Virus record (IMG/VR): IMGVR_UViG_3300033182_000674
Coordinates: 62,001-126,000 of that record
Direction: 5' to 3' (one strand)
DNA: 64,000 nt
Every line of letters begins with the position of its first letter. Position 1 is the first letter of the stretch. The notes under the pieces were generated by a model. It did not search any database. It was not told the origin of the DNA and saw only the letters and a program-made list of their open reading frames with translations. Shown here one piece after another: positions 6,316 to 36,159 of this stretch. The position numbers were made by a program, and so were the translations under genes.

Positions 6316-6660
6316 TTAGAATTTATCTTCTACTGTATCCTTTGCTTTATCTACTGCCTTTTTGATCTTACCGCTGAAACCAAATGATTTCTTAGGAGCA
6401 GATGCTGTTACTTTAGGCGCCTCAGGTGCTTCTTCAAGTTCTTCAGCAACAAGTACTGGTGCTTCTTCTTGAACTTCTTCTACGACTGGCGCTGGCTTTG
6501 GTGCTGCTTTTTTAGCAGGCTTGACACCTAGATACTCATCAATCTCTTCTTGAGTGAAAGATCTAGGTAATAGAATTTCATTTCTAGCTGGATGCTTCCA
6601 ACCTTTAGTTGTTGGTACGCCGCCTTTTGCTGCTACCCACGCTGGTGCTTTAATTGCCAT
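6316..6660 (-). CDS. Hypothetical protein with Ala/Pro/Lys/Glu low-complexity tail
   Basis: 114 aa ORF with AGGA RBS; PT.KGW.HP...E.L motif. Confidence 0.6.
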   Translation of the reverse strand: MAIKAPAWVAAKGGVPTTKGWKHPARNEILLPRSFTQEEIDEYLGVKPAKKAAPKPAPVVEEVQEEAPVLVAEELEEAPEAPKVTASAPKKSFGFSGKIKKAVDKAKDTVEDKF

Positions 6661-6690
6661 ATTAGTATTCCTTTTTAAAAATTAAAAATA

Positions 6691-7656
6691 TCATGGTGTA
6701 GTATCATTCATCCAGCCACTAAACCTCTTAAGAAGTCTAGGTGCTTTATCTTTTCTTCGTCTTCTATCTATAGCGACGATACCATCATCACCTGCACCAG
6801 CCACACTAGTTGTATTAACTGCTGGTTCTTCGGTAATATTATATTTATCTTTATACATTTCTAGAAGATCATCTGGATCCATAGTTAAGTTATATGCTTT
6901 AGAAATGGTAACCGCATGATGTTCCATTGGAATATCAAGCTTATGAGATGAAATAAGTGTGTGTAAAGCTTTTACAGCCATTTCGATATTTAATTCGTGT
7001 TCTTCTTTCATTTGTTTACCGTTATCCTTAATCCATTTCTTTGCAATTGGATTTTCTGGTGATCTTTTAATCCATGCTCCCATTCTTTTATAAAGAGATT
7101 GAGTAGCACCTTTAAAGTTACCTTCATTAGAATTATCTATAACATACATGTGACGGCCAAATAAGTTTTGGAACTTACCAATATTATCTTGTACTTCTTG
7201 CCACATTTTCTTTACTATATCATCTGGTAAAGATCGTGCTCTAGCCGAATTACGATCTAGTGCAGTTTGTAGATTAGTATTAACAAAAATCATTGAAACA
7301 TCATAACCAAGCTTTCTTAATTCTTCTGCTTGGCCTTTAATTTTATCAAAGTTCTTACCAGTTCCATCAATAACTAATCCTAATCTACCTTTTAGGTATA
7401 GATTCATTTGTGATTTTGTTAATGCAACTGATTTCTTTCTAATTTCTTGACCCTTTGGTGAAAAAATATTAGATGGTGTCATATCCATTTGTGCTTTCTT
7501 AAGAGCTGCTTCAAAAAAATTATCTGAATTAACTAACTTTAAGCCAAATGAAGTTAATGCTGTTTGTCCTACAATAAATGATTTACCAGAACCTGGACCA
7601 CCGGCTAGAAACACAGCCTTAAAAATACCAGGATCATTTACTCCTTCTAATAACAT
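6691..7656 (-). CDS. P-loop kinase (zeta-toxin/AAA_33/PNK-like), possibly virion-internal
   Basis: Walker A GGPGSGKS, VNSD, LVIDGT and lid RN..R.R motifs. Confidence 0.8.
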   Translation of the reverse strand: MLLEGVNDPGIFKAVFLAGGPGSGKSFIVGQTALTSFGLKLVNSDNFFEAALKKAQMDMTPSNIFSPKGQEIRKKSVALTKSQMNLYLKGRLGLVIDGTGKNFDKIKGQAEELRKLGYDVSMIFVNTNLQTALDRNSARARSLPDDIVKKMWQEVQDNIGKFQNLFGRHMYVIDNSNEGNFKGATQSLYKRMGAWIKRSPENPIAKKWIKDNGKQMKEEHELNIEMAVKALHTLISSHKLDIPMEHHAVTISKAYNLTMDPDDLLEMYKDKYNITEEPAVNTTSVAGAGDDGIVAIDRRRRKDKAPRLLKRFSGWMNDTTP

Positions 7657-8240
7657 TAAATGATTTCCTCTATGGTGAAATATATTTTTTGTGCAGTTTT
7701 AATATGTGTACCTTCATATATATTCAAACCACAAATATCACCAACCGGCAAAGTATTTTCACTTACACGGACTTGATCACCAGGATTGACAATCTCTTCG
7801 CATGTTGAGTTAACCATTTTAGAATATTTTAATTTATAGACGCCGGGTGCTACTGAACCATCATCTAATAAGAACCAAGAACTTGATTCATTGAGAAATT
7901 GAACAGGCTCATAACCTGTCTCTTCTATAATCTTTTGTACACCTTTATCAGTAAGATTTAGATTTTCTTTAATAAGATATAAAGCAGCTGCATATGATGC
8001 AATAGAAGAACGACCACCCGGAATCTTACCAAGTAATCTTTTGATATTGAATACTAGACGGTGGAAAGGTGTGTATGCATTCTTTTCTTCAGACGTATTA
8101 ATCCGATTTTCTTTAATACGCTTACCTTTTTCATCAATAAGGCCAAGTTTAAATGCTTCAGTTTTTTCAAAAGGTGTTACCAATAATGTTAAGAAACGAA
8201 AGGTATAGACTAAGTCACCTGCTCTTTTTAAAATTCCCAT
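7656..8240 (-). CDS. Conserved hypothetical protein of marine T4-like phages
   Basis: Y.FRFL.LL.TPFEK..AFKLG.ID and FHRLVFNIKR motifs; translationally coupled. Confidence 0.6.
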   Translation of the reverse strand: MGILKRAGDLVYTFRFLTLLVTPFEKTEAFKLGLIDEKGKRIKENRINTSEEKNAYTPFHRLVFNIKRLLGKIPGGRSSIASYAAALYLIKENLNLTDKGVQKIIEETGYEPVQFLNESSSWFLLDDGSVAPGVYKLKYSKMVNSTCEEIVNPGDQVRVSENTLPVGDICGLNIYEGTHIKTAQKIYFTIEEII

Positions 8241-8250
8241 TTTATATCCC

Positions 8251-8622
8251 TTAAATCTCTCTTAATACAGCTACAACCTTTTTATCCATTGAAATACCAG
8301 TATATTGTTCATTAGTAATATATTTCATAAAAACTAGAAATGGCTTAATCACTGGCCAATGTTTTTCTTCTAGTTTTAATTCTAATATATTTAAAGAAGC
8401 TTCTATATTGAATGAATTAAAAATAACAATCAAATGATTTAAAATCAAACGTTCAGAAAGATTACCTGTTTCCAGATACTTATTTAGTAATCGCTTTAAG
8501 TATTTAAAACGATGTAAATCTTCTTGAAACTCTTCAAAGTCTATACACTTAGGATTATAATAATGCTTTGCAGCGTATAGCAGAAGATTATCTTCTGTTA
8601 GTACATAATTAGGTTGTTGCAT
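8251..8622 (-). CDS. Conserved hypothetical protein of T4-like phages
   Basis: YA.KHY.NP.C....EF.EDL.RFKY.KRL and ERLILNH motifs. Confidence 0.65.
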   Translation of the reverse strand: MQQPNYVLTEDNLLLYAAKHYYNPKCIDFEEFQEDLHRFKYLKRLLNKYLETGNLSERLILNHLIVIFNSFNIEASLNILELKLEEKHWPVIKPFLVFMKYITNEQYTGISMDKKVVAVLREI

Positions 8623-8638
8623 AATATAGTTTTATTTT

Positions 8639-9547
8639 TTATTTTCCGCTTTTTACAATACTCTTATCACCGGTTGCTTGATCAGCTGGTCTCTTAGGTG
8701 CAGCTTTAACATCAGCAGCAAATGATTTAAAGTTTTGTACGTTTACTTTCTCATGATCATATTTATCATCAGTTTCAACTTTATGCATATCAACAAAATC
8801 TTTTTCGCCTTTACGCTTCTTTAATTGATCTACCCAATTATCACGTGTAATAGGATCAGACTTGTGATTTGCGGTTGGCTTATCAGCTTTAGGCTCTTTA
8901 GGCTCAAATGCTTCAGTTGTTTCTACTTTCATATCTTCATCCTGATCTTCATGCTGTACTTGAGTATTATTACCAGACTTTAATCTTTTCTTACCAATAG
9001 ATCCAATACCTAGTTTACGCATTGCTTTTTCTTTCGCTTCTTTTTCAGAACGTGCAGATACAGTTGCAAAACCACGTCCGGGAATAGTGATTTTATAACT
9101 CTTATCTTCTGATACTTCTTCTACAGATTCTAGTTCTACACTTTCTTTTTGAGGCTCTACAACATCTTTTTCTTTTTCATCATCGCATTCACATGGTTCT
9201 TTACCGCATGAATCACAAACCTCATCAGATTCTTTAGCTTCATTCTTTACAGCTTTACTGACTGCTTTACGACGATTGTGGAGATATTCATCAGACTCAT
9301 CTTCATCACCATCATTATCGATGTCTTTATCTTTACGATCATCAAACTTTTTCTTTAATGCTTTAGGCTGAACCTTGTCCATACCTTCACCATCGTCTGA
9401 TACGTCGTTAGTATTATCTTCTTTCTTACAACTCTTTCTTTCTTCAAGAGTTTCTTCTTCAAGAGTTTCTTCCAAGACTTCTTCTTTCTTATTAAGTCCT
9501 AAGACTTCTAAATATGCTGAAGTCATGTTTTTGTAATCGATTGCCAT
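8639..9547 (-). CDS. Highly charged late protein, probable internal head/core protein
   Basis: D.D.DNDGD.D.SD.YL..RRKA motif, many LEE/VEE sites, late promoter at 9596-9603. Confidence 0.55.
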   Translation of the reverse strand: MAIDYKNMTSAYLEVLGLNKKEEVLEETLEEETLEERKSCKKEDNTNDVSDDGEGMDKVQPKALKKKFDDRKDKDIDNDGDEDESDEYLHNRRKAVSKAVKNEAKESDEVCDSCGKEPCECDDEKEKDVVEPQKESVELESVEEVSEDKSYKITIPGRGFATVSARSEKEAKEKAMRKLGIGSIGKKRLKSGNNTQVQHEDQDEDMKVETTEAFEPKEPKADKPTANHKSDPITRDNWVDQLKKRKGEKDFVDMHKVETDDKYDHEKVNVQNFKSFAADVKAAPKRPADQATGDKSIVKSGK

Positions 9548-9595
9548 TATTATCTCCCGGTTTATAATTTGTGGCTTTTCATTAAAGCTTATCTA

Positions 9596-9603
9596 TATTT
9601 ATA
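9596..9603 (-). promoter_or_regulatory. gp55-dependent late promoter (TATAAATA); further copies at 2935, 16553, 20128, 24906, 33447, 55292, 55776
   Basis: Exact T4 late consensus on the minus strand, each copy ~30-80 nt upstream of a gene start; gp55 is encoded in the window. Confidence 0.8.
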
Positions 9604-24871: not shown

Positions 24872-24923
24872 TTTGTTAAACCCTATCAGTTGTTTGTTAT
24901 TATACTATTTATAGTTATTTTAA

Positions 24924-27860
24924 TTAGCCATTCCATGTAGCCATTGAGCTAAATGTATTGTGAACATTTTGTACTTCACTTTGAGATAATTCAACATCCC
25001 AGAATAATATAGCTTGAATTTCATAACCAGATGACCAGCTTAATCCGTAATTGTTCAATTGGAAACCATTTGATGATGCGCCGCCAATTCCCGTTATAGC
25101 ATATGAATTAAATAAATTAGCATCCATCGCATTCCAAGCAGCTTGTCTATGTCCCACGTTTGTACCATTTACATATTGTGCAGTCCAAGTATAACTATTT
25201 CCAAGGTCTGAAGACGATGATGGATCCATTACACCTATATATTGCGACCCGCCAGGACCCCATAAAACTGTTTGATTATCGGCACCGTCATTGGGTACTG
25301 ATAATATTATAATAGCGGTATTAACATTACTAAAGATATTAGTATCGAATGGAATATTAGTATTAGTTGCAATATTAAGTACTGTAGTACCACCTATTCC
25401 AGCACCATAAGTAGCAGATCCAAGGGTAATAGTTTGATCGTTACCCGCCGCACTTAAATCATATAAATCTGTTCCAGTGCCAGGATAGCTACTTGTCTTT
25501 CTAAAATCATACCAACCAATCAAATTAGCTAATTGTGGTAAAGGAAACGCAAGTGATATTGTTGAATATGCTGAAGAGAAATTTAATCCATCAGTTGCAG
25601 TAAATCTAGCAGTAATATCACCAGAATTATTAAGATCAGAATCCGGAGTTAATGTAAATGTACCATCATTATTGTTTACGATTGTAACTTTAGTTTGATT
25701 AGATGGATTAATATCAACATCATATGTTATAGGGAAACCTTCTGGATCTTCTGCTGCAATTGTTAATGTTGATGCAGAATCTCCTATATTTAAGCTTAAT
25801 GTTGAAGGTGGGCTTGTTGTCCATAATGGTGAATCATTAGGACCACTATAAATTTGTTTCCAAGCTGAACCGTCCCAAACATATAATGTTTTAGAACCAG
25901 TAACAAATGCTAAACTACCAGCAGTATCTGGGAATGGTAGTTGTGCTTCAGCCGCATATTCTTCTACACCTTGTGGAATAGTTACTCTAGCTGCAACATA
26001 ATCAGAATCAACAACTGCTGCAACATTTGATTCAATATTATTCCAACCTAAATCATTAACTGCAGTATTAACAATTGAAGTTAATTGAGTATCTGGAATT
26101 TCTCTAATATAATATTTACTAAATGATGTTACTACCAATTCATCGTTTAATGACGCTGCTGGTGAAAGTGTTATAACTGTGCCATTTGTTGCAGTGTAAT
26201 CATCTGATGTTAATAACACACCATTCAAATGAACTAAAATATTTCCAGGATTATATGATAAAGTATTACCATTATCATCGCCATTAGAGAAAGCAACTTG
26301 CCCCGCAGTGGCAGTAAATTTAAATACATCTACTGTAGCTTCAGTATCAGGGAAACTATTATCTAAATAATTAGCTACCTTACTATTAATATAATCAGAG
26401 TCTAAATCAATATTAAACATCTGAGACATAGATACAATTAAGATCTCATCATTAGCATTAATAGCTTGCTGAATAGTTACTGTTGATCCATCATTTGCTG
26501 TATAGTCAGGACCTTCTACAATTAATACACCATTTAAATAAATTAAAATGTTACCATTATCATATGATAAAGTATTGCCATTAGCATCACTACCAGAGAA
26601 TATAGTCTGGCCTTGAGATGCAAGATATCTAAACTTTTGTAATCCTAATGTAGATGGAAAATCTGGTAAGTTAAGTGGGACATAATGTGCAACACGATTA
26701 TCAATATAAGATGAATCAATAATATCAGAAGCTTCTAATACATAACGTGTTTTAAAATTATGAATATTAACTGCATCTTGAGAATCTAATGCAGCATTAA
26801 ATACAATAGTATCACCTGCAGAATATGTTGTATAGTCATTTCCTTCAGTAAGTAAAATACCATTTACAAAGACTTGAAGATGACCAGCATCATAATTTAG
26901 TGTATTACCATTAATATCTAGACCAGTGAATTGAGTTTGACCTTGAGATGCAAAGTACTTAAACTTATCAATCTCTCTAGTACCGCCATAGATTTCATTG
27001 ATTCTATTTAAAACATAATTTGAATCAATAATATCTTCATACGCAAAATTAACTTTAACATTTGTTGTTACGATTGTAATTTCAGTATCAACCGCTAATT
27101 GAACAGTTGTTGTAATCTTTGAAGGACTGGTTGAAACAACATAGTCTTCGGTTTCAACTAATAAAACACCGTTAGAATATACATCAATCGTTTTATTAAC
27201 TAGATCTAATGTATTACCATTTGCATCAGTTCCAGTATATTCAGTTTGTCCAGAAGTTGTAACATAATGATATTTAGTTACATCAATTTCGCCTGGAAAA
27301 TCTAATGGAACATTAGGTGATAAGAATAATGTAGAGAAAGAGTTAATATAAATCTCTTCTCCAGCAAGAGCAGGTGTTGTTAATGTAATTGTATTACCAT
27401 TAGAAACGGTATAGTCTTCGCCTTGAATATAAAGAACACCATTTGAAAATACTTGTACAGCATTATCTTCAAAAGCTAAAGTATTACCATTTGCGTCCAA
27501 ACCAGTAAATTGTGTTTGATTTGCTGTAGCGACAAATTTAAAGTAATTAAAGAATCCTTGACCGACAAGTACTTGGCCATTAACCTTATTAAGAATATAA
27601 TCAGAATCAATAATTGCTTCTAATGATGCTGAATCGATTGTACCAGATCCACCACTACCAAAAGTAGCATCTCTAAATTCGAATTTATTTGTGGTATCAT
27701 TCCAAACAATAACTTGATTATCAGTAGCAGTATCAGTATCGATTCCTAATCCAGGCAGACGTAAACGATCGCTTGAGCTATCGCCCAAAACAATATCGTT
27801 AGCTGGTGCACTAGCAGTTAACGTAAAGACTTCAGCAAGTGATCTACCTTTTGTCGCCAT
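24924..27860 (-). CDS. Large tail-associated protein with five tandem repeats, Ig-like module and C-terminal lectin-like domain
   Basis: Same repeat as 20131-23118 plus LYVWDG, AEDPEG and WYD.....SYPGTG...DLS modules. Confidence 0.7.
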   Translation of the reverse strand: MATKGRSLAEVFTLTASAPANDIVLGDSSSDRLRLPGLGIDTDTATDNQVIVWNDTTNKFEFRDATFGSGGSGTIDSASLEAIIDSDYILNKVNGQVLVGQGFFNYFKFVATANQTQFTGLDANGNTLAFEDNAVQVFSNGVLYIQGEDYTVSNGNTITLTTPALAGEEIYINSFSTLFLSPNVPLDFPGEIDVTKYHYVTTSGQTEYTGTDANGNTLDLVNKTIDVYSNGVLLVETEDYVVSTSPSKITTTVQLAVDTEITIVTTNVKVNFAYEDIIDSNYVLNRINEIYGGTREIDKFKYFASQGQTQFTGLDINGNTLNYDAGHLQVFVNGILLTEGNDYTTYSAGDTIVFNAALDSQDAVNIHNFKTRYVLEASDIIDSSYIDNRVAHYVPLNLPDFPSTLGLQKFRYLASQGQTIFSGSDANGNTLSYDNGNILIYLNGVLIVEGPDYTANDGSTVTIQQAINANDEILIVSMSQMFNIDLDSDYINSKVANYLDNSFPDTEATVDVFKFTATAGQVAFSNGDDNGNTLSYNPGNILVHLNGVLLTSDDYTATNGTVITLSPAASLNDELVVTSFSKYYIREIPDTQLTSIVNTAVNDLGWNNIESNVAAVVDSDYVAARVTIPQGVEEYAAEAQLPFPDTAGSLAFVTGSKTLYVWDGSAWKQIYSGPNDSPLWTTSPPSTLSLNIGDSASTLTIAAEDPEGFPITYDVDINPSNQTKVTIVNNNDGTFTLTPDSDLNNSGDITARFTATDGLNFSSAYSTISLAFPLPQLANLIGWYDFRKTSSYPGTGTDLYDLSAAGNDQTITLGSATYGAGIGGTTVLNIATNTNIPFDTNIFSNVNTAIIILSVPNDGADNQTVLWGPGGSQYIGVMDPSSSSDLGNSYTWTAQYVNGTNVGHRQAAWNAMDANLFNSYAITGIGGASSNGFQLNNYGLSWSSGYEIQAILFWDVELSQSEVQNVHNTFSSMATWNG

Positions 27861-27861
27861 A

Positions 27862-28140
27862 TTAATATTCTCTTATTTGTAATACTAAATTAGTTTTGCC
27901 TTTAATTATACGATGATATTCACATGATTCAATATGAAATTCATCACCTACTTTTAGATCAAATGGAATTTCATTATCATATTGGAATTTCCATCCTTCT
28001 CCTTCTAGAACTTCTACGGTTCTATTATTTTCATCCCTATGCCACACAAGTTCTTTTGACGAAACGTCTTTATCAAATTCTCTAATAATATAACCATCTT
28101 CAACAACCTGTGTGTAAGGTCTATTAAGATTTTCTACCAA
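27862..28140 (-). CDS. Small cupin-like protein
   Basis: LVWHRD...R...V.EG.GW.FQ.D...YHR.IKG. Confidence 0.65.
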   Translation of the reverse strand: MVENLNRPYTQVVEDGYIIREFDKDVSSKELVWHRDENNRTVEVLEGEGWKFQYDNEIPFDLKVGDEFHIESCEYHRIIKGKTNLVLQIREY

Positions 28141-28925
28141 AAGAAATTGCCTCCACCACTAAGTCCTAATTGTTTTGCATAATATGGTAATCTACATGAC
28201 CAATAACCTGATGAAGTCTTGTCATTTTTTTGATCACAATTATGTCTTGCAACGAAAGACTTACGCGCTGCAGGGTCATCGATCTTAGCCTTAAGGCCAG
28301 TTGTATCTCCAAAAGAAACCTTTTTAACATTACCTGTTTTTGGATCTTTCACATAAACATAAAACTTTTTAGCGCCACCACGCTTTGGTTTATTAAGTTC
28401 TACATCTTTTTCTTCGTTAATTTTACCAACGATTTGCGCATCTACATCAACTGCAGATCCATCTTTAATTCTGAACTTAGCAGTACGTTTATTTGGTAAT
28501 TCTAGAGTAATAAATTGTTTACCAACGTTCTTAACTTTAAGTTTGTATTTACCAGACTTGCCGATTGGTCCAGAAGCAGTTAGATTAACTTCTACAGTAT
28601 CGCCTTTTTGAATATTCATCTTTTTCATAAAAGGACCCATACGTACTTCGTTAACGGATTCTCTTTCCATCATTGGACAATCTAAAGGTACATGCTTTCC
28701 TTCATACATATCAAATAAACCAATATCAGTTTGTTCTAATAAAAACTTATCAATTCCTTCTGGAATATATGTACCTTCTTCCATTTGTTTGCGTGCTTCA
28801 GCAAATAAAGCATAATAGCCTTCTGAACCAACACGAAAAACATTTTCATTTAATGGAATACCTTTTTCGATATGATACTCTAAATTTAGAGATGCATCAT
28901 TATTATATGTCTTAAATGTTTTCAT
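28134..28925 (-). CDS. Probable internal head protein (conserved C-terminal KF.VYV...KKV.FG...RKSF.ARH.C domain)
   Basis: MKTFK start, multi-module layout with VNE/INE boundaries. Confidence 0.6.
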   Translation of the reverse strand: MKTFKTYNNDASLNLEYHIEKGIPLNENVFRVGSEGYYALFAEARKQMEEGTYIPEGIDKFLLEQTDIGLFDMYEGKHVPLDCPMMERESVNEVRMGPFMKKMNIQKGDTVEVNLTASGPIGKSGKYKLKVKNVGKQFITLELPNKRTAKFRIKDGSAVDVDAQIVGKINEEKDVELNKPKRGGAKKFYVYVKDPKTGNVKKVSFGDTTGLKAKIDDPAARKSFVARHNCDQKNDKTSSGYWSCRLPYYAKQLGLSGGGNFFW

Positions 28926-29356
28926 CCGAATTCATGTCCTGCAACGCGTCTCATTTCTTTTTTAAATTGTTCATATGAAGGCTTTTCTTTATATAACTTA
29001 ATAGAAATTTCTGGTCTATCTTTACCTTTAATTCTCCAGTTATAACCTTTTTCTTTATGTTCAGGTTTAGTTGTTTTTACAACTCGTCTTTTATAACCAG
29101 CTTCCCAGCTTTCTGAACCTTCATCTAAACTTTCGGTAACCATATTAGCTAATTCTCTAGCATCAACACCATTATATTGTTTTGCTATTTGAGAAGCATA
29201 ATATTCAATACCATGTTTCTTATCTTTCTTTTTACGTGCCCATACTTTTTTTAGTGTATCAGCAGCATGCTTATAAGCTTTCTTATGAGTTAGCTTACTT
29301 ACACCTCTGGTAAACCAATTACCATCTTCTTCTATATAGGACTTAAACGTTTTCAA
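28922..29356 (-). CDS. Probable internal head protein
   Basis: MKTFKSYIEE resembles the T4 capsid-targeting sequence; two basic modules split by ESLDE. Confidence 0.6.
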   Translation of the reverse strand: MKTFKSYIEEDGNWFTRGVSKLTHKKAYKHAADTLKKVWARKKKDKKHGIEYYASQIAKQYNGVDARELANMVTESLDEGSESWEAGYKRRVVKTTKPEHKEKGYNWRIKGKDRPEISIKLYKEKPSYEQFKKEMRRVAGHEFG

Positions 29357-30729
29357 TTCTTTTTACCACGCTCTTTAGCCATTAATGCTGCCAATTTACC
29401 AAGAGTATGTTGATCTTTATGAGTCATATTATCTCTTTTTCTTTGGTCTAATTGTCTATTCATAGACTTACCATACTCAGCAGATGATTCATTCTTTTCT
29501 TTGCGTTCTGCATCTAAGAAAGCAGCTACTGCCATTTTCTTACGCTCATCTTTATCTTTACCTTTAAATTGAGGAGCATCGGATGATTGAAAATCTTTAA
29601 CCCAAGCACCCATTCCATCAGATACTTTAAGAACTTCATTTACACTTTCTTGATGATCAGAATTTGCAACCTTTTTACGTTGCTTTGGAATCATCTTAAT
29701 TCTCATTTTACCCATAGCATCTCGATATGTTACAGGTTTCTTATCAGCAGAAGTTACAAAGTTTGCTGTATTAACATCGCCAGATGCTTCATCAATATCA
29801 TCTTTTCCTGTAGCTTTTGCTCTAAATGCTTTCTTTGCATCAGCAGGAGTAACTCTATCAATACTCTTAATCATTTCTTCTGGCTTCTTTAATTTTTGTC
29901 TAAGAGAAGCTTTAATTTCGCCAGCTGATCCACCATCAATATACATCTTTGGCAAACCTTCAATGTCTACTTTATATAATGCTTCATTAACATCTTCTTT
30001 CTTCAACGCTTCTTTTTCACGTTGGTGTTTATCTGCTAATGATTCTTTTTCTCTGGCATGCTTAAGTTTTAGTTGAGCCTTTTGTGCTTCTGATGCAGCT
30101 TCTTCAACTTGCTCTTCTTTTAACTTACCTTTCATTGCACCATACATTTTATCGCTTTTACCTGCTTCGCGATCCTTATCTTTTTTCTTTTCAGCATCTG
30201 TAGGTGGTGTATATCTTAAAGAGCTAGATTGTTTTTGTTTAATTAAACGACCTAATGTTCTTGGTCTGCTCCAAGCTTCATCAACGCTTTCAAATTTCAT
30301 ATCATCAAGATCTAAATCTTTTACATCTTCTTCATCTTCAATATCTGACTTATTAGCCATCATATAATCTCTAACAGTATCTAAATCTTCCATAGCTCTA
30401 GAGATTTTTCCCTGACACCATTCAGGAAGATTTTCATCATCTTCCATCATATCATGTAATTCTTCTGCAGCATCAGCAATAACAACTAAATGATCTTTAG
30501 CCATATCACCTTCATTATCATATTCATCATCGTCTTCATACATTGCATGATAGTTTCTATAGCCTTCATGTAGTTTACTATCTAAACCACCAGCAAGTGC
30601 ATCGAATAATGAGAAGGCTGAGATGTTTTCGATTTGCTCCATCTCTTCAGCCAATTTAATAAACTCTGGCTTATTTGCATTATGAGCAATAGCCGATCTA
30701 AAAGTATTAAGCCATTTATCTGCTGACAT
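29353..30729 (-). CDS. Probable internal head polyprotein
   Basis: Modules separated by ESVDEA, EQVEEA, EDVNEA, DIDEA, ESVNEV. Confidence 0.55.
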   Translation of the reverse strand: MSADKWLNTFRSAIAHNANKPEFIKLAEEMEQIENISAFSLFDALAGGLDSKLHEGYRNYHAMYEDDDEYDNEGDMAKDHLVVIADAAEELHDMMEDDENLPEWCQGKISRAMEDLDTVRDYMMANKSDIEDEEDVKDLDLDDMKFESVDEAWSRPRTLGRLIKQKQSSSLRYTPPTDAEKKKDKDREAGKSDKMYGAMKGKLKEEQVEEAASEAQKAQLKLKHAREKESLADKHQREKEALKKEDVNEALYKVDIEGLPKMYIDGGSAGEIKASLRQKLKKPEEMIKSIDRVTPADAKKAFRAKATGKDDIDEASGDVNTANFVTSADKKPVTYRDAMGKMRIKMIPKQRKKVANSDHQESVNEVLKVSDGMGAWVKDFQSSDAPQFKGKDKDERKKMAVAAFLDAERKEKNESSAEYGKSMNRQLDQRKRDNMTHKDQHTLGKLAALMAKERGKKN

Positions 30730-31732
30730 TTTTATCTCCCTTGGAATTTCTCAATCTAGCAGACTGAGCTCTTTTAATAGTATTAAATGTTTTAGGAACC
30801 TTTGCCGTTGGCTTTGGTTGTATTGACTTTTCGTTACTAGGTAATTGGCCTGGAATAATTTTCTTTAAATCATTTGTATATTCAGGCGTACCAACTTCAT
30901 ATACTTTTTCTTCTAGTGGCTCTACAGCATCTAGCCATTTACGAATAGTCTTACCATCTGATAATTCTAAAATCAGATAATTAGATCCTTTATGTTGCAC
31001 TGTTGCAACTTCTTCGGTTTCTTTAATAACAACTTGATCACCTTTATTGAAAATATCTCCGGTAACAAATTGTTCTCTAATCTGTGAAACAGGTTCCATT
31101 TGAACATGATTTCTAAATTCGGTTTGCTCTTTAAGACCCATACCTTTTCTCACTGCATTAAATAAATCTTTTGAATCTTTATTAGAAAAGTTCTTAGGAA
31201 GACCATGTGAGAATTGAACAAAGTCATTGTCTGCTGCAGCATTTCTTTGTTTGGTTGCAGACGCGCCAGATACATCATCAGAATCTGGATCTCTTTCACC
31301 TGCTGAAATAACCTTAATAGATTTAAAGTTATATAAACCATGACGAGCTTTAACACCATTATATTTGTTTAAAAGCATGTCGAATTCTTTTATACGATCA
31401 TCACCAACAACCATAACTAAATTTACATAGCCTTCTTCAAACATTGAAGTGGCCGCGCCCATAACATTCTTTACGTTCTTATTCATCATAATAAAACGAG
31501 CATGTTTTGGAAACATCTTACGCACAAATTTAACTTTCTCTGTATACGACAAGGGATTCTTTTTAGCGTCCTGTGACTGCGTAAGATAGACACGATATGG
31601 ATTACGTTGTGCTTTAGATGATAATTTATCTAAAAGCATACCATGTCCAATAGTAGGAGGATTCATTCTACCAAGAGTAAAATAAATTGTTTTTTCTTCT
31701 TCTACTAAATATTGTCTGAAGGAATTAATCAT
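30716..31732 (-). CDS. HxGH-type nucleotidyltransferase (cytidylyltransferase-like) with C-terminal SH3/KOW-like domain
   Basis: GRMNPPTIGH, KNPL, VVG.DR and SATK.R motifs; N-terminus MINSFRQYLVEE. Confidence 0.8.
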   Translation of the reverse strand: MINSFRQYLVEEEKTIYFTLGRMNPPTIGHGMLLDKLSSKAQRNPYRVYLTQSQDAKKNPLSYTEKVKFVRKMFPKHARFIMMNKNVKNVMGAATSMFEEGYVNLVMVVGDDRIKEFDMLLNKYNGVKARHGLYNFKSIKVISAGERDPDSDDVSGASATKQRNAAADNDFVQFSHGLPKNFSNKDSKDLFNAVRKGMGLKEQTEFRNHVQMEPVSQIREQFVTGDIFNKGDQVVIKETEEVATVQHKGSNYLILELSDGKTIRKWLDAVEPLEEKVYEVGTPEYTNDLKKIIPGQLPSNEKSIQPKPTAKVPKTFNTIKRAQSARLRNSKGDKNVSR

Positions 31733-32169
31733 TTCGAACCGCCACCCCTTTTTCTGGCTAACTCAGCTTTACGAATCTTAGGTAGTAGTTTCTTTGCAAT
31801 ACGATCTATTCTACCGCCCATTCTTTCGAGTTTCTTTTCAATTTCCTGCTTACGAGCGTATGTCAATTCGCTCTTAGGAATTCCTTTAGTAATTTTCTTA
31901 AGGACTAAATTTCTTGCTGCACGTCTAGAACGTTTCTTTAGCACAGGCAAAGATGCAACTCTTCGCTTAGCTCTTAAACGTCCCATGCGAATCTTTGATT
32001 TGTTTTTACGGAGAGAACGAGCACGCTTTAAACGTTGTTGTAAACTAAGCGCTTCGCCAACAGGACCGCCGCCAAGGCCTCTACGCTTTCTACGTTGTGC
32101 TCTATAATTCATGAAGTCGTCTTCACCTGCAAGAGTATCGACGACAGTTAAGTCTTTAAAATCTAACAT
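31729..32169 (-). CDS. Extremely Arg/Lys-rich protein, possible DNA-condensing internal protein
   Basis: Composition; VGEAL possible processing site. Confidence 0.6.
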   Translation of the reverse strand: MLDFKDLTVVDTLAGEDDFMNYRAQRRKRRGLGGGPVGEALSLQQRLKRARSLRKNKSKIRMGRLRAKRRVASLPVLKKRSRRAARNLVLKKITKGIPKSELTYARKQEIEKKLERMGGRIDRIAKKLLPKIRKAELARKRGGGSK

Positions 32170-33395
32170 TAGTTTCTTCCTGGTTTATCCCATCCCTTTA
32201 ATACATCTGGCGAAAAGTTGTTGTATGAAAATTCCAATCTGTCAACAATCTTTACCGCGTCACCACCAAGTCTATCGATAGCAACATAACCTTCATGGCC
32301 TGTTACCTTAAAACCGTCCTTAGTTTTCACAAACGTATCGATAGTTTTCATCTTATTAAGTATATTTATAAGCTTTAACTTGACTTCTACTATTAATTTT
32401 TGCAAGTCAAACATCTTTTTAAGATTAGCTTTATTGCTATCACTAAAGAATAAAAGTAACTCATCTAACTTTTTTTGTTTAGATGCTTTACCTTTATCTG
32501 ATTTCATTTTTTCTTTTTCTGCTAGAACTTTTTGAATAATCCATTTAATAAGACCATTTACATGTCTTGTTGTATTTGTAATTGATTGACCAGCTCTAAC
32601 ATGAGTATTATTATATTGTTCAATCATTCTAGGTAATTCAGGATGCGCTTGTAATTGTTTTAGAGTAGTACTAGAAATTTGATTAAAGAGTTTACCAATC
32701 ATAGTTAATTTTTTATTAACATCATCAGTATCTCTTTTCGTCATAGTAATATTAGTCATATCTCTAAGCATTGCATCTTGTGACCACACATTAGCAGATT
32801 TTTTAAACTTACTAACATCTACACCGTATGAAGCTTTCATTGATTCGAAAGTACTTCCCGTATAAGTAGTATGCCATACAATACCAATCTTTGCACGTTT
32901 AATTTCTCTAGCGCCAGGTGATTTTGCTGGTACTGCGTAAATGATCGTATTAGGATGGAAAGTTAAATAGCTTTCACCATCAATAGTTTCAGTACTTAAA
33001 TCTGATTTTGAGAATAGAAAATCACCTTGTACAACACCTTTAATTCCTAGCTCTGGTAAATATTGTAGTGCTGCTTTAAGTTTATCTGAGAGGTCACCAG
33101 AGGTGTCTGCATCCACTTCTTCGGGTGTTTTATAGACCTTAGGGTTCTTATTAAAGATACCTTTCTTAGCTACAAAGAATTTACCATCAGATGGATCAAT
33201 ACCAGCAAATACGGCAGGAGCGCCGTCCCACTTAACACTAACAGAACCGCCATGACCACCAAGCATATTTCTCAAATCTCTAAGAGCAAAGATTGCTTCA
33301 CGGACACCATTCACGCCACCATATAATACTCTATCCTCAATATGAGTCATATGAGTATTTTTCTGTTCGTTAAGTGTTTGACTAAATGTTTTCAT
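32169..33395 (-). CDS. Ligase-fold nucleotidyltransferase-like protein (DUF6267-like)
   Basis: KWDG (motif I), VQGDF (III), EGYV (IV), VKIVDR (V); N-terminus MKTFSQTLNE; late promoter at 33447. Confidence 0.65.
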   Translation of the reverse strand: MKTFSQTLNEQKNTHMTHIEDRVLYGGVNGVREAIFALRDLRNMLGGHGGSVSVKWDGAPAVFAGIDPSDGKFFVAKKGIFNKNPKVYKTPEEVDADTSGDLSDKLKAALQYLPELGIKGVVQGDFLFSKSDLSTETIDGESYLTFHPNTIIYAVPAKSPGAREIKRAKIGIVWHTTYTGSTFESMKASYGVDVSKFKKSANVWSQDAMLRDMTNITMTKRDTDDVNKKLTMIGKLFNQISSTTLKQLQAHPELPRMIEQYNNTHVRAGQSITNTTRHVNGLIKWIIQKVLAEKEKMKSDKGKASKQKKLDELLLFFSDSNKANLKKMFDLQKLIVEVKLKLINILNKMKTIDTFVKTKDGFKVTGHEGYVAIDRLGGDAVKIVDRLEFSYNNFSPDVLKGWDKPGRN

Positions 33396-33460
33396 TCATT
33401 ATCCACCAAAAATACTAATACCTTGTTGTTTTAATAATTATACTACTATTTATATAAATT

Positions 33461-33486
33461 AAAAAAGGAGCCGAAGCTCCTTTTTT
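33461..33486 (-). terminator. Rho-independent terminator with UUCG tetraloop
   Basis: Minus strand AAAAAAGGAGC-TTCG-GCTCCTTTTTT directly after the DUF932 stop; likely bidirectional. Confidence 0.92.
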
Positions 33487-33487
33487 A

Positions 33488-34441
33488 TTAAGCTGCTGTG
33501 GCAAATTTGACTGCCTCTTCAGCGGCTTGGACTTTACGTCGTTGGTTATTACCAAACCATTGACTATGTAGTCGATTCTCTGCATTTCGACCTTGCACGT
33601 GGTCAGTAATATAAGTTACTGAATTAAGTGCTTGCCACCACGAACCTTCTGCAAAGTTAGCACCAGGTTGAGTCTCAAGAACGTCAAATGCTTGTTGTGC
33701 AGAACGTGAAAGATCATCATATGTTTTAACAACCTTTTCACCTTTACGCGATGTTGAAGGGAATACTTGGTTATAGTATTGAATCAATGCATCCATATCG
33801 AAACGTTTCTTACCAAGGAATTCAGCCATCTCTTTGTACTTAGCAAACTTTTCATGTGCAATACCAAGAGTCTCTTTTACAGTATCTGCGTTAAATTCAG
33901 TACGGTGACCAACTTTAACTGCACGTTGTGCTTGCTCATTTAGTGACATTGTCAAAGTATTATTACATACCACACGGATAGGTGTGAAACGAATATCAAT
34001 TGACTTACCATATTGGTGTGGATTAGAGAACAAGAGATATGAATCAACTTGGTCACCACCAAAGATATCAAATGACTCTTTAACTTTTGCAAGAGCCCAT
34101 ACAACTTGTCCATCACGAAGTGAACCCGCTGTATGCATTTCCATATCACCTGCAAGTACATATTCATTAAAGAAGTCAAATGCTTCTTCATTTTGTACTG
34201 GCTTCCAATCTTTACCAACGTTAGTTAGGATACGACCGTCTGTTGAACGAACCAAAGACTTTTGACCAGTTGGAATACGATCACCTTTGAATTCAACAAA
34301 TGATTCTACTTCTTCAACACCCCAATCAACACCAGCTTTTTGCATCATTTGAGCTGGAGTTAGATCATTACTAACTGATACACCAAGACCATGCCAAGGG
34401 ACCTGACCTGCGTATGCCATTGTTTCTACCATATGTGCCAT
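33488..34441 (-). CDS. DUF932 / phage-plasmid-like protein
   Basis: MAH.VETMAY....PWHGLG, VQN.EAF.F, TAGSL..G..VW.LA, TPIRVVCNNTL motifs. Confidence 0.85.
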   Translation of the reverse strand: MAHMVETMAYAGQVPWHGLGVSVSNDLTPAQMMQKAGVDWGVEEVESFVEFKGDRIPTGQKSLVRSTDGRILTNVGKDWKPVQNEEAFDFFNEYVLAGDMEMHTAGSLRDGQVVWALAKVKESFDIFGGDQVDSYLLFSNPHQYGKSIDIRFTPIRVVCNNTLTMSLNEQAQRAVKVGHRTEFNADTVKETLGIAHEKFAKYKEMAEFLGKKRFDMDALIQYYNQVFPSTSRKGEKVVKTYDDLSRSAQQAFDVLETQPGANFAEGSWWQALNSVTYITDHVQGRNAENRLHSQWFGNNQRRKVQAAEEAVKFATAA

Positions 34442-35666: not shown

Positions 35667-35733
35667 TATAAGGATATTTTATTTTTTAATGGATATGTGA
35701 TTTATGATTAAAATCTTTAATAATGAGAGAAAG

Positions 35734-36030
35734 TAGCAGGGTTTTGGGTGATAAGGAAACCCTGCTAGAACCTCAGATGGATCATGCTGCTAGAGCATAA
35801 CCACCATAAACGTCATCGTTTGCGTTTACTTTAAATGACAGTTAGGCTGTCTAGCCATTCTCAGTAATGCTTTCAAAACCCTGTCGAAACTGATCATCCC
35901 CGCCATAAGCACACCCTGCGTAGTCTTCAAACGTACTCGTCGAACCTTACTGCGCCTGACGGGTGTGCTTATGGTGGAGATGGTGGGAATCGCACCCACG
36001 TCCAGAGCTCCTATTGACATTACGTCAACG
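35734..36030 (-). ncRNA. ssrA: Circularly permuted two-piece tmRNA
   Basis: Acceptor piece with T-arm GTGGG-TGCGATT-CCCAC and CATCTCC-ACCA ending at 35972; 70 nt intervening hairpin; coding piece starting GGGGATG at 35901 (G3.U70 pair); tag frame 35823-35782 = ANDDVYGGYALAA*; terminal hairpin 35734-35767. Confidence 0.93.
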
Positions 36031-36159
36031 AATTAATTGCATCATTTCTGCTGTGACAAAAATAACTTTGCCTAAAAGAAATGTTGCTGCAACCCACAAA
36101 ATCACATAGCACCAACAGCAACTACATGATCCTATGGATTTAAACCATTTATCAAGCAT
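36025..36159 (-). CDS. Small Cys-rich membrane peptide (44 aa)
   Basis: MLDKWFKSIGSCSCCWCYVILWVAATFLLGKVIFVTAEMMQLIR; start overlaps the end of the upstream gene. Confidence 0.45.
   Translation of the reverse strand: MLDKWFKSIGSCSCCWCYVILWVAATFLLGKVIFVTAEMMQLIR

What the first reader, a model, noticed from the sequence alone, without database searches (positions are those of the whole stretch)
28134..33395. Late operon of enzymes with capsid-targeting-like leaders: a possible packaged and injected nucleotidyl-transfer/repair kit
Several linked late genes start with sequences resembling the T4 internal-protein targeting peptide (MKT(Y/F)..F..E, cleaved after I/L-x-E by gp21): MKTFSQTLNE, MINSFRQYLVEE, MKTFKSYIEE, MKTFKTY.... 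Two are enzymes: a ligase-fold protein (KxDG/GD/EG/K motifs) and an HxGH nucleotidyltransferase related to NMNAT/PPAT. Inference: these are packaged, matured and injected with the DNA to act before gene expression, for example in RNA repair, NAD+ restoration or protein nucleotidylation against host defences. The P-loop kinase at 6691-7656 (MLLE start) could supply an end-healing activity.
Basis: inference. Interest (0 to 1): 0.72.

Follow-up and report, generated by a model that had tools for sequence, protein, structure and literature searches.

The report
Capsid-targeting leaders on phage enzymes
In an ocean T4-like phage, a late-expressed gene cluster puts a T4-style ten-residue "pack me into the head" tag on a ligase-like enzyme, an adenylyltransferase and their partner proteins, so they probably travel inside the virion; what they do there or in the next host is not yet known.

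Summary
Window 28134-33395 (minus strand) carries six translationally coupled genes. An intrinsic terminator and a T4-type late promoter (TATAAATA) precede them.

Three genes start with a clear T4-like capsid-targeting leader: M-x-x-F-x-x-[FYH]-[IL]-x-E. Two more carry degraded versions. The conserved positions (4, 7, 8, 10) are the ones shown experimentally in T4 IPIII to direct head targeting (4, 7) and gp21 cleavage (8, 10).

The same optional leader heads three unrelated enzyme families:
- DUF6267, an RNA-ligase-like fold with KxDG, EG and K motifs.
- An HxGH adenylyltransferase with a PPAT/NadD-like fold.
- A Zeta/AAA_33 kinase, which keeps only a stub (MLLE) in this phage.

Gene fusions elsewhere link all three enzymes and three of the four non-enzyme proteins of the cluster.

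The genome encodes a gp21-type prohead protease and a gp55-like late sigma factor. In the published virion proteome of cyanophage S-CREM2, all five clear leader-bearing proteins were detected, including the homologous cytidylyltransferase. S-SZBM1 gives one more case.

Packaging is therefore well supported indirectly. Cleavage, injection and the biochemical role (nucleic-acid end repair, NAD+ or other) remain inferred. I found no prior description of this leader in marine T4-like phages.

The parts
33460..33487 (-). Intrinsic terminator closing the upstream (DUF932) unit
   Evidence: 12-bp stem, TTCG loop, T-run
33447..33454 (-). T4-type late promoter TATAAATA, 52 nt upstream of the first ATG
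   Evidence: Genome-wide, 28 of 44 copies lie in the 4.9% of the genome that is intergenic (p = 3e-26). A gp55-like sigma factor is present.
33402..33407 (-). Ribosome-binding site GGTGGA, 6 nt before the ATG at 33395
   Evidence: Read
32169..33395 (-). DUF6267 protein, 408 aa: 10-residue leader followed by an RNA-ligase-like nucleotidyltransferase with a helical insert (residues 220-347)
   Evidence: Pfam PF19782 E = 4e-104, starting at residue 13. AF2 pLDDT 94, with residues 1-10 below 50. RNA ligases at Z 6.8-7.6. AFDB 'RNA ligase domain' hit at E = 6e-5. Invariant K55, D57, G58, D125, E368, G369, K382.
33366..33395 (-). Leader MKTFSQTLNE of the DUF6267 protein (putative CTS; L-N-E cleavage site)
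   Evidence: Among homologues, F4, I/L8 and E10 are invariant or nearly so, and position 7 is mostly F/Y/H.
31729..32169 (-). 146-aa very basic protein (pI 11.8, net charge +34), weak leader MLDFKDL
   Evidence: The C48C1 counterpart starts MLSFKQFVSE.
30716..31732 (-). HxGH adenylyl/cytidylyltransferase-like enzyme, 338 aa: leader, Rossmann domain (11-200), SH3-like barrel (233-272), basic disordered tail
   Evidence: PF01467 at 21.3 bits; phrog_395/3041 'cytidyltransferase'. AF2 model. Foldseek hits to PPAT/NadD/NMNAT at probability 1.0. 35% identical to virion-detected S-CREM2 gp154.
31700..31732 (-). Leader MINSFRQYLVE (register shifted by one; L-V-E site)
   Evidence: F5 and E11 invariant, L9/V10 nearly invariant in 70 homologues
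29353..30729 (-). 458-aa highly charged protein (net charge -11), no leader. Residues 249-314 occur fused to the kinase in other phages.
   Evidence: 50% identity, E = 4e-13 to P0423, P0456, P0458
28922..29356 (-). 144-aa basic protein with leader MKTFKSYIEE (TTG start overlapping the upstream stop). Its C-terminal 62 aa match the C-terminus of a DUF6267+NTase+DUF5824 fusion.
   Evidence: 58% identity, E = 1e-18 to P0125
28134..28925 (-). 263-aa basic protein, partial leader MKTFKTY. Its C-terminal domain (phrog_7595) occurs fused, behind a full leader, to DUF6267 in P0123.
24924..28140 (-). Cupin-like 92-aa gene and 978-aa fibre-like structural gene, joined to the cluster without intergenic gaps (same late unit)
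   Evidence: The next TATAAATA is at 24906-24913.
6691..7656 (-). Zeta/AAA_33 P-loop kinase with a vestigial leader (MLLE), in a second late unit that starts at the TATAAATA at 9596-9603
   Evidence: PF06414 at 38 bits. 56% identical to the kinase part of the leader+kinase+DUF6267 fusion P0122. 64 of 120 homologues carry the full 10-residue leader directly before GVNDP.

Best explanation
The cluster is a late-transcribed cargo module of a T4-like marine myophage. A short N-terminal leader has an aromatic residue at positions 4 and 7 and [I/L]-x-E at positions 8-10. It works like the T4 capsid-targeting sequence. It docks the proteins onto the scaffolding core while the prohead assembles. The gp21-type prohead protease then removes it after the Glu. 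The mature, basic proteins stay in the head with the DNA. From there they are most likely delivered with the genome into the next cell.

The cargo is one functional system, not a random set. It consists of an RNA-ligase-like lysine nucleotidyltransferase (DUF6267), an HxGH adenylyltransferase-like enzyme, a Zeta/AAA_33 kinase encoded 20 kb away, and accessory domains that are fused to these enzymes in other phages.

The most likely chemistry is phosphorylation, adenylylation and joining of polynucleotide ends, or adenylyl transfer to a phosphorylated small molecule such as NMN.

Shown by sequence:
- The late-promoter architecture.
- The leader and its conservation pattern.
- The enzyme folds and catalytic motifs.
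- The fusion links.
- The presence of the protease.

Shown only for relatives, in published proteomes: virion association.

Inferred: cleavage, injection, substrates and benefit.
For: Leader register. Information content in the leader peaks at positions 4, 7, 8 and 10 in three unrelated families. These are the IPIII positions found by mutagenesis to control targeting (4, 7) and processing (8, 10) (PMC9026906 sec. 2.6). T4 ipII and ipIII start MKTYQEFIAE.

The leader is an optional, detachable module:
- About 25 of 119 diverse DUF6267 proteins lack it.
- In those that have it, the linker to the domain varies from 2 to 9 aa.
- It lies outside the Pfam model.
- It is disordered in both AF2 models.

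The genome has a PF03420 prohead protease (E = 5e-45), a gp22/gp23 head module and a gp55-like sigma factor.

A terminator plus TATAAATA stands in front of the cluster. S-CRM01 has the same arrangement.

Published proteomes:
- S-CREM2: all five clear leader genes are among the 52 virion proteins of 221 annotated features (Fisher p = 6e-4, or 3e-3 if gp175, a borderline sixth leader gene that was not detected, is counted). They are the SAM hydrolase, the APH-like kinase, the cytidylyltransferase and ORFs 13 and 136.
- S-SZBM1: the leader-bearing cytidylyltransferase _140 was detected. The leaderless DUF6267 _141 is not listed.

Rosetta-stone fusions tie the parts together.

The leader-bearing proteins are basic, pI 9.3-11.8.
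Against: - There is no proteome, cleavage or injection data for this phage.
- The leaders of the 263-aa and 146-aa proteins and of the kinase are degraded here. The 458-aa protein has none.
- The 144-aa leader depends on a TTG start.
- Two leader-bearing small proteins of S-SZBM1 (191, 192) are not in its shallow 30-protein list.
- The authors of the S-CREM2 paper themselves warn that abundant late proteins may co-purify with virions.
- In many cyanophages DUF6267 and the transferase are leaderless and sit in the replication module. The enzymes' core role therefore does not require packaging.
- Ligase fold matches are only moderate: Z 6.8-7.6, Foldseek PDB E about 0.1.
- No sequence-level match to any solved ligase or transferase was found.
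Confidence: 0.6

Rival explanations
1. The enzymes work in the producing cell, not as cargo. DUF6267 is the phage's substitute for the missing gp30 ligase and seals nicks in replicated or concatemeric DNA before packaging. The transferase and kinase support it. The N-terminal motif is a conserved interaction or regulatory helix unrelated to head targeting.
For: - The 220-kb genome, rated 100% complete, has no PF01068 or PF01653 DNA ligase and no PF09414 RNA ligase.
- In cyanophages the gene pair lies between g41 and g61 in the replication module.
- Many homologues are leaderless.
- Leaderless S-SZBM1_141 is absent from the virion list.
Against: - A terminator and late promoter separate the cluster from the replication genes, here and in S-CRM01.
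- The motif is shared by unrelated enzymes (SAM hydrolase, APH-like kinase) that were all found in virions.
- The conserved positions match the T4 CTS functional positions.
- The leader is disordered and variably spaced from the domain.
- The nearest folds are RNA ligases rather than DNA ligases, and no OB domain is present.
Confidence: 0.2
2. The leader does target the proteins into the head, but they act there or in assembly rather than after injection. They might act as scaffold-core components, as DNA-condensing internal proteins, or as enzymes that mend or modify the packaged genome.
For: - Very basic proteins, with basic tails on the enzymes.
- T4 internal proteins are embedded in the packaged DNA (PMC3012670).
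- Nothing here bears on ejection.
Against: - ATP-dependent enzymes have no obvious nucleotide supply inside a filled head.
- In T4, CTS cargo (IPI*, Alt) is ejected into the host (PMC3012670 and PMC9026906).
Confidence: 0.15
3. The N-terminal similarity is chance or a translation-initiation bias (A-rich codons after the start) in an AT-rich genome.
For: - MK- starts are common.
- The genome is 34% G+C.
Against: - 0.026 strict matches are expected per genome. Two plus one near-match are seen in adjacent genes.
- Conservation falls on hydrophobic and acidic positions 4, 7, 8 and 10, while positions 2, 3, 5, 6 and 9 vary.
- Codons differ between leaders.
- The reversed-pattern control gave 0-1 hits per strand in each genome against up to 4 forward.
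Confidence: 0.03

Closest known systems
T4 internal proteins IPI/IPII/IPIII and their capsid-targeting sequence (Mullaney & Black 1996; reviewed in PMC9026906 and PMC3012670)
   Same: - A ten-residue N-terminal leader in the same register: aromatic at positions 4 and 7, I/L at 8, E at 10.
- Diverse mature parts behind a conserved leader.
- Clustered, late-expressed genes.
- A gp21-type protease in the genome.
- Basic proteins.
   Different: - The cargo is mid-sized enzymes and their accessory domains, not small restriction inhibitors.
- Position 4 is Phe rather than Tyr.
- The host phage belongs to the marine branch far from the T-evens.
- Cleavage and ejection are untested.
T4 Alt (packaged, gp21-processed ADP-ribosyltransferase)
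   Same: An enzyme carried in the head, processed by the prohead protease and injected to act before gene expression (PMC9026906).
   Different: - No ART fold here.
- The chemistry is nucleotidyl or phosphoryl transfer of the ligase / HxGH / P-loop types.
T4 Pnkp + Rnl1/Rnl2 and fungal Trl1 (kinase plus RNA ligase end-healing and sealing)
   Same: - Nearest solved folds are Trl1-LIG, NgrRnl, Rnl2, REL1 and Rnl1.
- KxDG, EG and K motifs are present.
- A P-loop kinase is fused to or partnered with the ligase-like domain.
   Different: - No hit to Pfam RNA-ligase models.
- No phosphatase, 2H/CPD or Tpt1 partner in the genome.
- There is a large helical insert and an N-terminal HxxHxED motif.
- The constant partner is an HxGH transferase, which known RNA-repair systems lack.
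- The known systems are early cytoplasmic enzymes, not head cargo.
PPAT (CoaD), NadD and NMNAT HxGH adenylyltransferases
   Same: - Rossmann fold (Foldseek probability 1.0, TM by hit 0.6-0.7).
- T/HxGH and SxTxxR motifs.
   Different: - 13-20% identity.
- Fold search cannot tell which substrate class applies.
- An extra SH3-like barrel and a basic tail are present.
- It is obligatorily linked or fused with DUF6267.
Virion-associated enzymes reported in cyanomyophage proteomes (S-CREM2 PMC10665884; S-SZBM1 PMC9146016; S-CRM01)
   Same: - A homologous cytidylyltransferase (35% identity) and the neighbouring genes were detected in virions.
- The operon layout is the same in S-CRM01.
   Different: Those papers report the detections without a targeting signal. 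The leader that unites these proteins is not mentioned there.

Membership tests
T4-type CTS-bearing head cargo (internal proteins) | N-terminal leader of about 10 residues with targeting residues at positions 4 and 7 | tested here: met
   F4 with Y7 or T7 in the 408-, 144- and 263-aa proteins, and F5/Y8 in the 338-aa protein. Across families, F4 carries 3.9-4.3 bits and the aromatic at position 7 carries 2.3-3.2 bits.
T4-type CTS-bearing head cargo (internal proteins) | gp21 processing site [L/I]-x-E at positions 8-10 | tested here: met
   L-N-E, L-V-E and I-E-E are present in three proteins. It is absent at that position in the 263-aa and 146-aa proteins.
T4-type CTS-bearing head cargo (internal proteins) | Genome encodes a gp21-type (S77) prohead protease and scaffolding core | tested here: met
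   PF03420 at 150 bits. gp22-like, gp23-like and portal genes are adjacent.
T4-type CTS-bearing head cargo (internal proteins) | Late transcription together with structural genes | tested here: met
   Terminator plus TATAAATA; no gaps through to a fibre-like gene; gp55-like sigma factor. This is motif evidence only, with no RNA data.
T4-type CTS-bearing head cargo (internal proteins) | Physical presence in purified virions | not testable with these tools
   Only relatives have data: S-CREM2 5 of 5 leader proteins, and S-SZBM1_140.
T4-type CTS-bearing head cargo (internal proteins) | Leader removed by the protease; mature protein ejected into the host | not testable with these tools
   The complex-prediction job gave no answer. 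No N-terminal peptide data are available.
ATP-dependent RNA/DNA ligase superfamily (covalent nucleotidyltransferases) | Motif I KxDG with catalytic lysine, plus motifs III, IV and V | tested here: met
   K55-x-D57-G58, D125, E368-G369 and K382 are invariant in 114 sequences. The second basic residue of motif V is not a lysine.
ATP-dependent RNA/DNA ligase superfamily (covalent nucleotidyltransferases) | Nucleotidyltransferase fold | tested here: inconclusive
   VIA Z 6.8-7.6 over 167-204 residues to six RNA ligases. AFDB 'RNA ligase domain' hit at E = 6e-5. Foldseek PDB gives only E about 0.1 to DNA ligases.
ATP-dependent RNA/DNA ligase superfamily (covalent nucleotidyltransferases) | Match to curated ligase sequence models (PF01068, PF01653, PF09414) | tested here: not met
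   No match anywhere in the genome at E <= 0.1. Profile searches against PDB were negative.
ATP-dependent RNA/DNA ligase superfamily (covalent nucleotidyltransferases) | Self-adenylylation and strand joining | not testable with these tools
   A biochemical assay is needed.
HxGH (HIGH) nucleotidyltransferases (PPAT/NadD/NMNAT/TagD) | (T/H)xGH and ISxTxxR-type motifs on a Rossmann fold | tested here: met
   TIGH and SATKQR motifs. PF01467 scores 21.3 bits against a cut-off of 21. Foldseek probability 1.0 to PPAT/NadD/NMNAT.
HxGH (HIGH) nucleotidyltransferases (PPAT/NadD/NMNAT/TagD) | Defined substrate (NMN, NaMN, phosphopantetheine, glycerol-3-P and so on) | not testable with these tools
   PPAT and NadD score equally, and there is no equivalog hit in NCBIfam.
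Zeta-toxin / AAA_33 P-loop kinases (includes polynucleotide-kinase-like) | Walker A P-loop and family HMM above cut-off | tested here: met
   GGPGSGKS motif. PF06414 at 38.1 bits (cut-off 22.3) and PF13671 at 33.1 bits. phrog_505 'polynucleotide kinase' at E = 5e-9. The substrate is unknown.

The most novel reading that the evidence does not exclude
A ten-residue capsid-targeting code is conserved across the whole T4 superfamily, including the abundant ocean myophages. If so, the set of proteins a phage injects can be read from its genome. In this lineage the pre-loaded cargo would be a three-enzyme kit of kinase, RNA-ligase-like enzyme and HxGH adenylyltransferase. The kit would act on nucleic-acid ends or on NAD-type nucleotides in the first seconds of infection, before any phage gene is expressed. 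One example would be resealing breaks in sun-damaged incoming DNA. Another would be countering host nucleases or NADases.
Probability: 0.3. Interest if true: 0.82.

Novelty: new variant of a known kind. Interest (0 to 1): 0.66.

Why it matters
- It would explain a recurring puzzle: metabolic-looking enzymes keep turning up in cyanophage virion proteomes, and co-purification could not be excluded.
- It gives a simple sequence rule for predicting head cargo in very abundant marine phages.
- It assigns a first functional context to DUF6267 and its constant partner, the 'cytidyltransferase'. Both are found in hundreds of isolated T4-like cyanophages (468 phage records match DUF6267) and in thousands of metagenomic protein clusters.
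- It links these two enzymes and a kinase into one system through gene fusions.
- It offers a natural tag for loading foreign proteins into marine phage heads.
- Because the leader is optional within each family, nature has already run the with-and-without comparison. That makes the hypothesis directly testable.

Tried and rejected
- **Complex prediction.** Complex prediction of the gp21-like protease with DUF6267 residues 1-120 gave no answer (score 0.02). It is not evidence either way.
- **Sequence searches of solved structures.** Single-protein and profile searches gave nothing meaningful for either enzyme.
- **Foldseek against PDB for DUF6267.** Only sub-threshold DNA-ligase hits mixed with noise came back. 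The Foldseek-independent VIA-align search of PDB representatives was needed to bring out the RNA ligases.
- **Leader as a DNA repeat or shared translation-initiation region.** Rejected, because upstream DNA and codons differ.
- **Trl1-type pathway partners.** I searched the genome for Tpt1, 2H phosphoesterase and canonical RNA or DNA ligases. None was found, so a complete Trl1- or T4-type repair pathway is not encoded.
- **458-aa protein versus virion protein S-SZBM1_139.** They have the same position and the same length but no similarity.
- **DUF5824 region of P0125 versus the 263-aa protein.** No similarity.
- **Literature.** There were no papers for 'DUF6267' or 'cytitidyltransferase'. 'Capsid targeting sequence' with 'cyanophage' returned only a T4 review. 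The Syn9 transcriptome paper is not held. The S-CREM1 proteome, with 14 proteins, is too shallow to use.
- **Sigma-70 promoter scan of the region.** Fewer matches than in shuffled sequence, so uninformative.

Full report
**Context.** The window is bases 62001-126000 of a single 219,676-bp viral contig with 34% G+C, rated complete. It is a T4-like myophage. It encodes gp43 polymerase, UvsX and gp41 helicase inside the window. Just beyond the window lie gp23-, gp22-, gp21-, gp20-, gp18- and gp17-like genes. The nearest isolates by DNA are Phage C48C1 (Kyanoviridae), the Methylophilales phages Melnitz and T4-like cyanophages. Almost all genes are on the minus strand.

**Observation.** Six ORFs fill 28134-33395 on the minus strand.

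| Coordinates | Length | Identity | Start |
|---|---|---|---|
| 33395-32169 | 408 aa | DUF6267 | MKTFSQTLNE |
| 32169-31729 | 146 aa | unnamed | MLDFKDL... |
| 31732-30716 | 338 aa | HxGH transferase | MINSFRQYLVEE |
| 30729-29353 | 458 aa | unnamed | no leader |
| 29356-28922 | 144 aa | unnamed, TTG start overlapping the upstream stop | MKTFKSYIEE |
| 28925-28134 | 263 aa | unnamed | MKTFKTY..., motif decays after residue 7 |

I confirmed in the T4 record that ipII and ipIII start MKTYQEFIAE. A strict version of the motif is expected 0.026 times among about 250 N-termini of this genome. A scan of every possible start in the genome found only two strict matches, both in this cluster. The DUF6267 protein falls short of the strict pattern only through T at position 7. 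The leaders are similar as peptides, not as DNA.

**The leader is a conserved, optional module with the T4 register.**
- In 106 close DUF6267 homologues, F4, I/L8 and E10 are invariant or nearly so, and position 7 is F, Y or H in 85 of them. Positions 2, 3, 5 and 6 vary freely.
- I took 88 diverse representatives chosen only for having a 12-30-residue N-terminal extension and anchored them at Met1. Information content again peaks at positions 4, 7, 8 and 10.
- About 25 of 119 representatives have no extension at all. In the others, the spacer between the leader Glu and the first conserved core motif ranges from 2 to 9 residues.
- The transferase family shows the same pattern shifted by one residue: F5 and E11 invariant, Y/F8, L9.
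- The kinase family of the gene at 6691-7656 shows it most clearly. In 64 of 120 homologues a ten-residue leader directly precedes the domain start GVNDP. The bit scores are F4 3.85, Y/F7 3.23, L/I/V8 2.94 and E10 4.32. The window's kinase and nine others keep only M-[IL]-x-E.
- According to the review of Black's work, amber-suppressor mutagenesis of the IPIII leader placed head targeting mainly at residues 4 and 7 and processing at residues 8 and 10 (PMC9026906 section 2.6). The match of conserved positions is exact.
- The leader lies outside the Pfam DUF6267 model, which starts at residue 13. It is the only low-confidence part of the DUF6267 model (residues 1-10 below pLDDT 50, whole model 94). 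It is also low in the transferase model. Fold matches to PPAT and NadD begin at residues 11-16.

**Late transcription unit.** Reading the minus strand after the stop of the upstream DUF932 gene, the elements come in this order:
- a 12-bp GC-containing hairpin with a TTCG loop and a T-run (33487-33460);
- three bases later, TATAAATA (33454-33447);
- a GGTGGA ribosome-binding site;
- the ATG at 33395.

Across the genome there are 44 copies of TATAAATA. Thirty-nine are on the coding strand. Twenty-eight lie in the 4.9% of the genome that is intergenic, typically 22-85 nt before a gene start (binomial p = 3e-26). A gp55-like late sigma factor is encoded at G000 123653-124057.

From 33395 down to 24924 the genes overlap or abut. 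The six genes, a cupin-like gene and a 978-aa fibre-like gene therefore form one unit. The next TATAAATA sits before the following structural gene. Cyanophage S-CRM01 has the same layout: an annotated terminator, AATAAATA, then DUF6267 and the leader-bearing genes. The kinase lies in a second unit that starts at the TATAAATA at 9596-9603.

**Independent evidence for packaging.** Two published virion proteomes of T4-like cyanophages contain homologues.
- In S-CREM2, 52 proteins out of 221 annotated features were detected (PMC10665884). I scanned the S-CREM2 genome for the leader. All five clear cases are in that list:

| S-CREM2 ORF | Annotation | Start |
|---|---|---|
| ORF6 | SAM hydrolase | MKDFDSFLEE |
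| ORF13 | hypothetical | MKDLHSFLTE |
| ORF14 | APH/ChoK-like kinase | MKRFDAFLTE |
| ORF136 | hypothetical | MQTFSMFFSE |
| ORF154 | cytidylyltransferase | MKNFSSFLTE, then a 25-residue spacer |

- Fisher p is 6e-4 for five of five. It is 3e-3 if gp175, a borderline sixth leader gene that was not detected, is counted.
- ORF154 is 35% identical over 259 residues to the window's transferase.
- In S-SZBM1 the cytidylyltransferase _140 (MRFRQFIIE plus a 28-residue spacer) was detected. The adjacent leaderless DUF6267 protein _141 is not listed. Two small leader-bearing proteins (191, 192) are also missing from this shallow 30-protein list (PMC9146016).
- The S-CREM2 paper states that kinases and cytidyltransferases are frequently detected in cyanophage virions. 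It cautions that co-purification is not excluded. It also says that kinase-like proteins have repeatedly been detected in cyanophage virion proteomes, citing the S-CRM01 paper among others. The S-CRM01 kinase g130 starts MISFDQFLSE.
- None of the papers I could search connects these detections to a targeting leader.

**What the proteins are.**
- *DUF6267.* PF19782, E = 4e-104. It has no sequence-level relative among solved structures. The model is confident. Among matches that cover the beta-rich core rather than the helical insert, all are RNA ligases:

| Match | Z |
|---|---|
| Trl1-LIG | 7.6 over 204 residues |
| Naegleria NgrRnl | 7.5 |
| T4 Rnl2 | 7.5 |
| tRNA ligase 6n0t | 7.4 |
| REL1 | 7.2 |
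| T4 Rnl1 | 6.8 |

  AlphaFold DB clusters add an 'RNA ligase domain-containing protein' at E = 6e-5, and long proteins that join this fold to a cytidyltransferase-like domain. K55-x-D57-G58, D125, E368-G369, K382 and an N-terminal H15/H18 pair are invariant or nearly so. I therefore read it as an active lysine nucleotidyltransferase of the ligase type, with a 130-residue helical insert and no OB domain.
- *The 338-aa protein.* It has TIGH and SATKQR motifs and a borderline PF01467 hit. Its fold matches PPAT, NadD and NMNAT at probability 1.0, but with no preference among them. An SH3-like barrel and a disordered basic tail follow the catalytic domain.
- *The kinase.* It exceeds the cut-offs for Zeta_toxin and AAA_33 and weakly matches phage polynucleotide-kinase families.

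**One system, by fusion.** In other phages:
- P0122 is leader + this kinase (56% identity) + DUF6267.
- P0191 and P0260 are HxGH transferase + DUF6267.
- P0125 is DUF6267 + transferase + DUF5824.
- The last 62 residues of the 144-aa protein match the C-terminus of P0125.
- The C-terminal domain of the 263-aa protein sits between a leader and DUF6267 in P0123.
- Residues 249-314 of the 458-aa protein occur at the N-terminus of kinase fusions that start with a leader.

Only the 146-aa, extremely basic protein has no fusion link. The leader-bearing proteins have pI 9.3-11.8, while the fibre-like protein downstream (pI 4.1) and the cupin-like protein (pI 4.8) are acidic.

**Function.** This part is inference. 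The genome has no recognisable DNA ligase, RNA ligase, Tpt1 or 2H phosphoesterase. DUF6267 is therefore its only ligase-fold protein. That supports two readings.
- It could be a cytoplasmic nick-sealing role replacing gp30. From my own knowledge, T4-like cyanophages lack gene 30. The review says only that many quasi-core replication genes are absent from marine cyanophages.
- It could be an end-healing and sealing kit carried in the head.

Late promoters here and in S-CRM01 argue against a replicative role. Leaderless versions in many cyanophages show that the chemistry is useful without packaging. The constant HxGH partner has no counterpart in known RNA-repair systems. It may supply an adenylylated cofactor such as NAD+, or adenylylate a phosphorylated end, but I cannot decide between these.

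**Verdict.**
- The sequence observation is confirmed and is far beyond chance.
- The late-operon claim and the fold assignments are supported.
- Packaging is supported indirectly by three lines: the T4-matching register, the optional and detachable nature of the leader, and published proteomes of relatives.
- Cleavage, ejection and the biochemical role are not shown.
- The kind of system, CTS-directed head cargo, is known from T4. Its presence in marine T4-like phages, its use on whole enzyme families, and the ligase-like/transferase/kinase cargo appear not to have been described in the literature I could search.

Noticed in passing
window 35691-36064 (-): ARAGORN calls a phage-encoded tmRNA with tag peptide ANDDVYGGYALAA. 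It lies about 2.3 kb upstream of the cluster.
   Followed up: no
window 6316-9603 (-): A second late unit starts behind the TATAAATA at 9596-9603. It holds a 302-aa highly charged protein, a DUF7207 protein (E = 1e-39), a 194-aa protein, the kinase and a 114-aa protein. In cyanophages, DUF7207-like genes sit in the same block as DUF6267 and the cytidyltransferase. The module is therefore split in two in this phage.
   Followed up: partly
whole genome G000: No ATP- or NAD-dependent DNA ligase, RNA ligase, Tpt1 or 2H phosphoesterase model matches anywhere in a genome rated complete. DUF6267 is the only ligase-fold protein.
   Followed up: partly
L012 7704-10313 (-) (S-CREM2 ORF12) and L030 5422-5973 (S-CRM01 g128): S-CREM2 ORF12 is annotated 'CRISPR-Cas9 nuclease' and was detected in virions. 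It shares with S-CRM01 g128 an N-terminus in which a leader-like F-x-S-F-[MI]-x-E-A-A follows about 17 extra residues. This could be a longer propeptide or a mis-called start.
   Followed up: no
L002 4953-12650 (-) = G000 130953-138650: A 2565-aa ORF sits between the gp68-like/gp21 genes and the portal gene, inside the head module. It is rich in fibre-like repeats.
   Followed up: no
L004 8688-10031 (C48C1 CDS0089): The annotated cytidyltransferase of Phage C48C1 starts at MNPPTIGHG, inside the first conserved motif. The start is probably mis-called and hides its leader.
   Followed up: no
L027 (S-SZBM1 122311-123125, genes 191 and 192): Two small proteins with perfect leaders (MKSFKSFLSE, MKTFKQYITE) lie between the virion proteins 190 and 195 in the S-SZBM1 structural module. 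They are candidate classical internal proteins.
   Followed up: partly
window 33488-34441 (-): The gene immediately upstream is a DUF932 protein (E = 1e-42). The terminator separates it from the cluster, so it does not look like part of the module.
   Followed up: no
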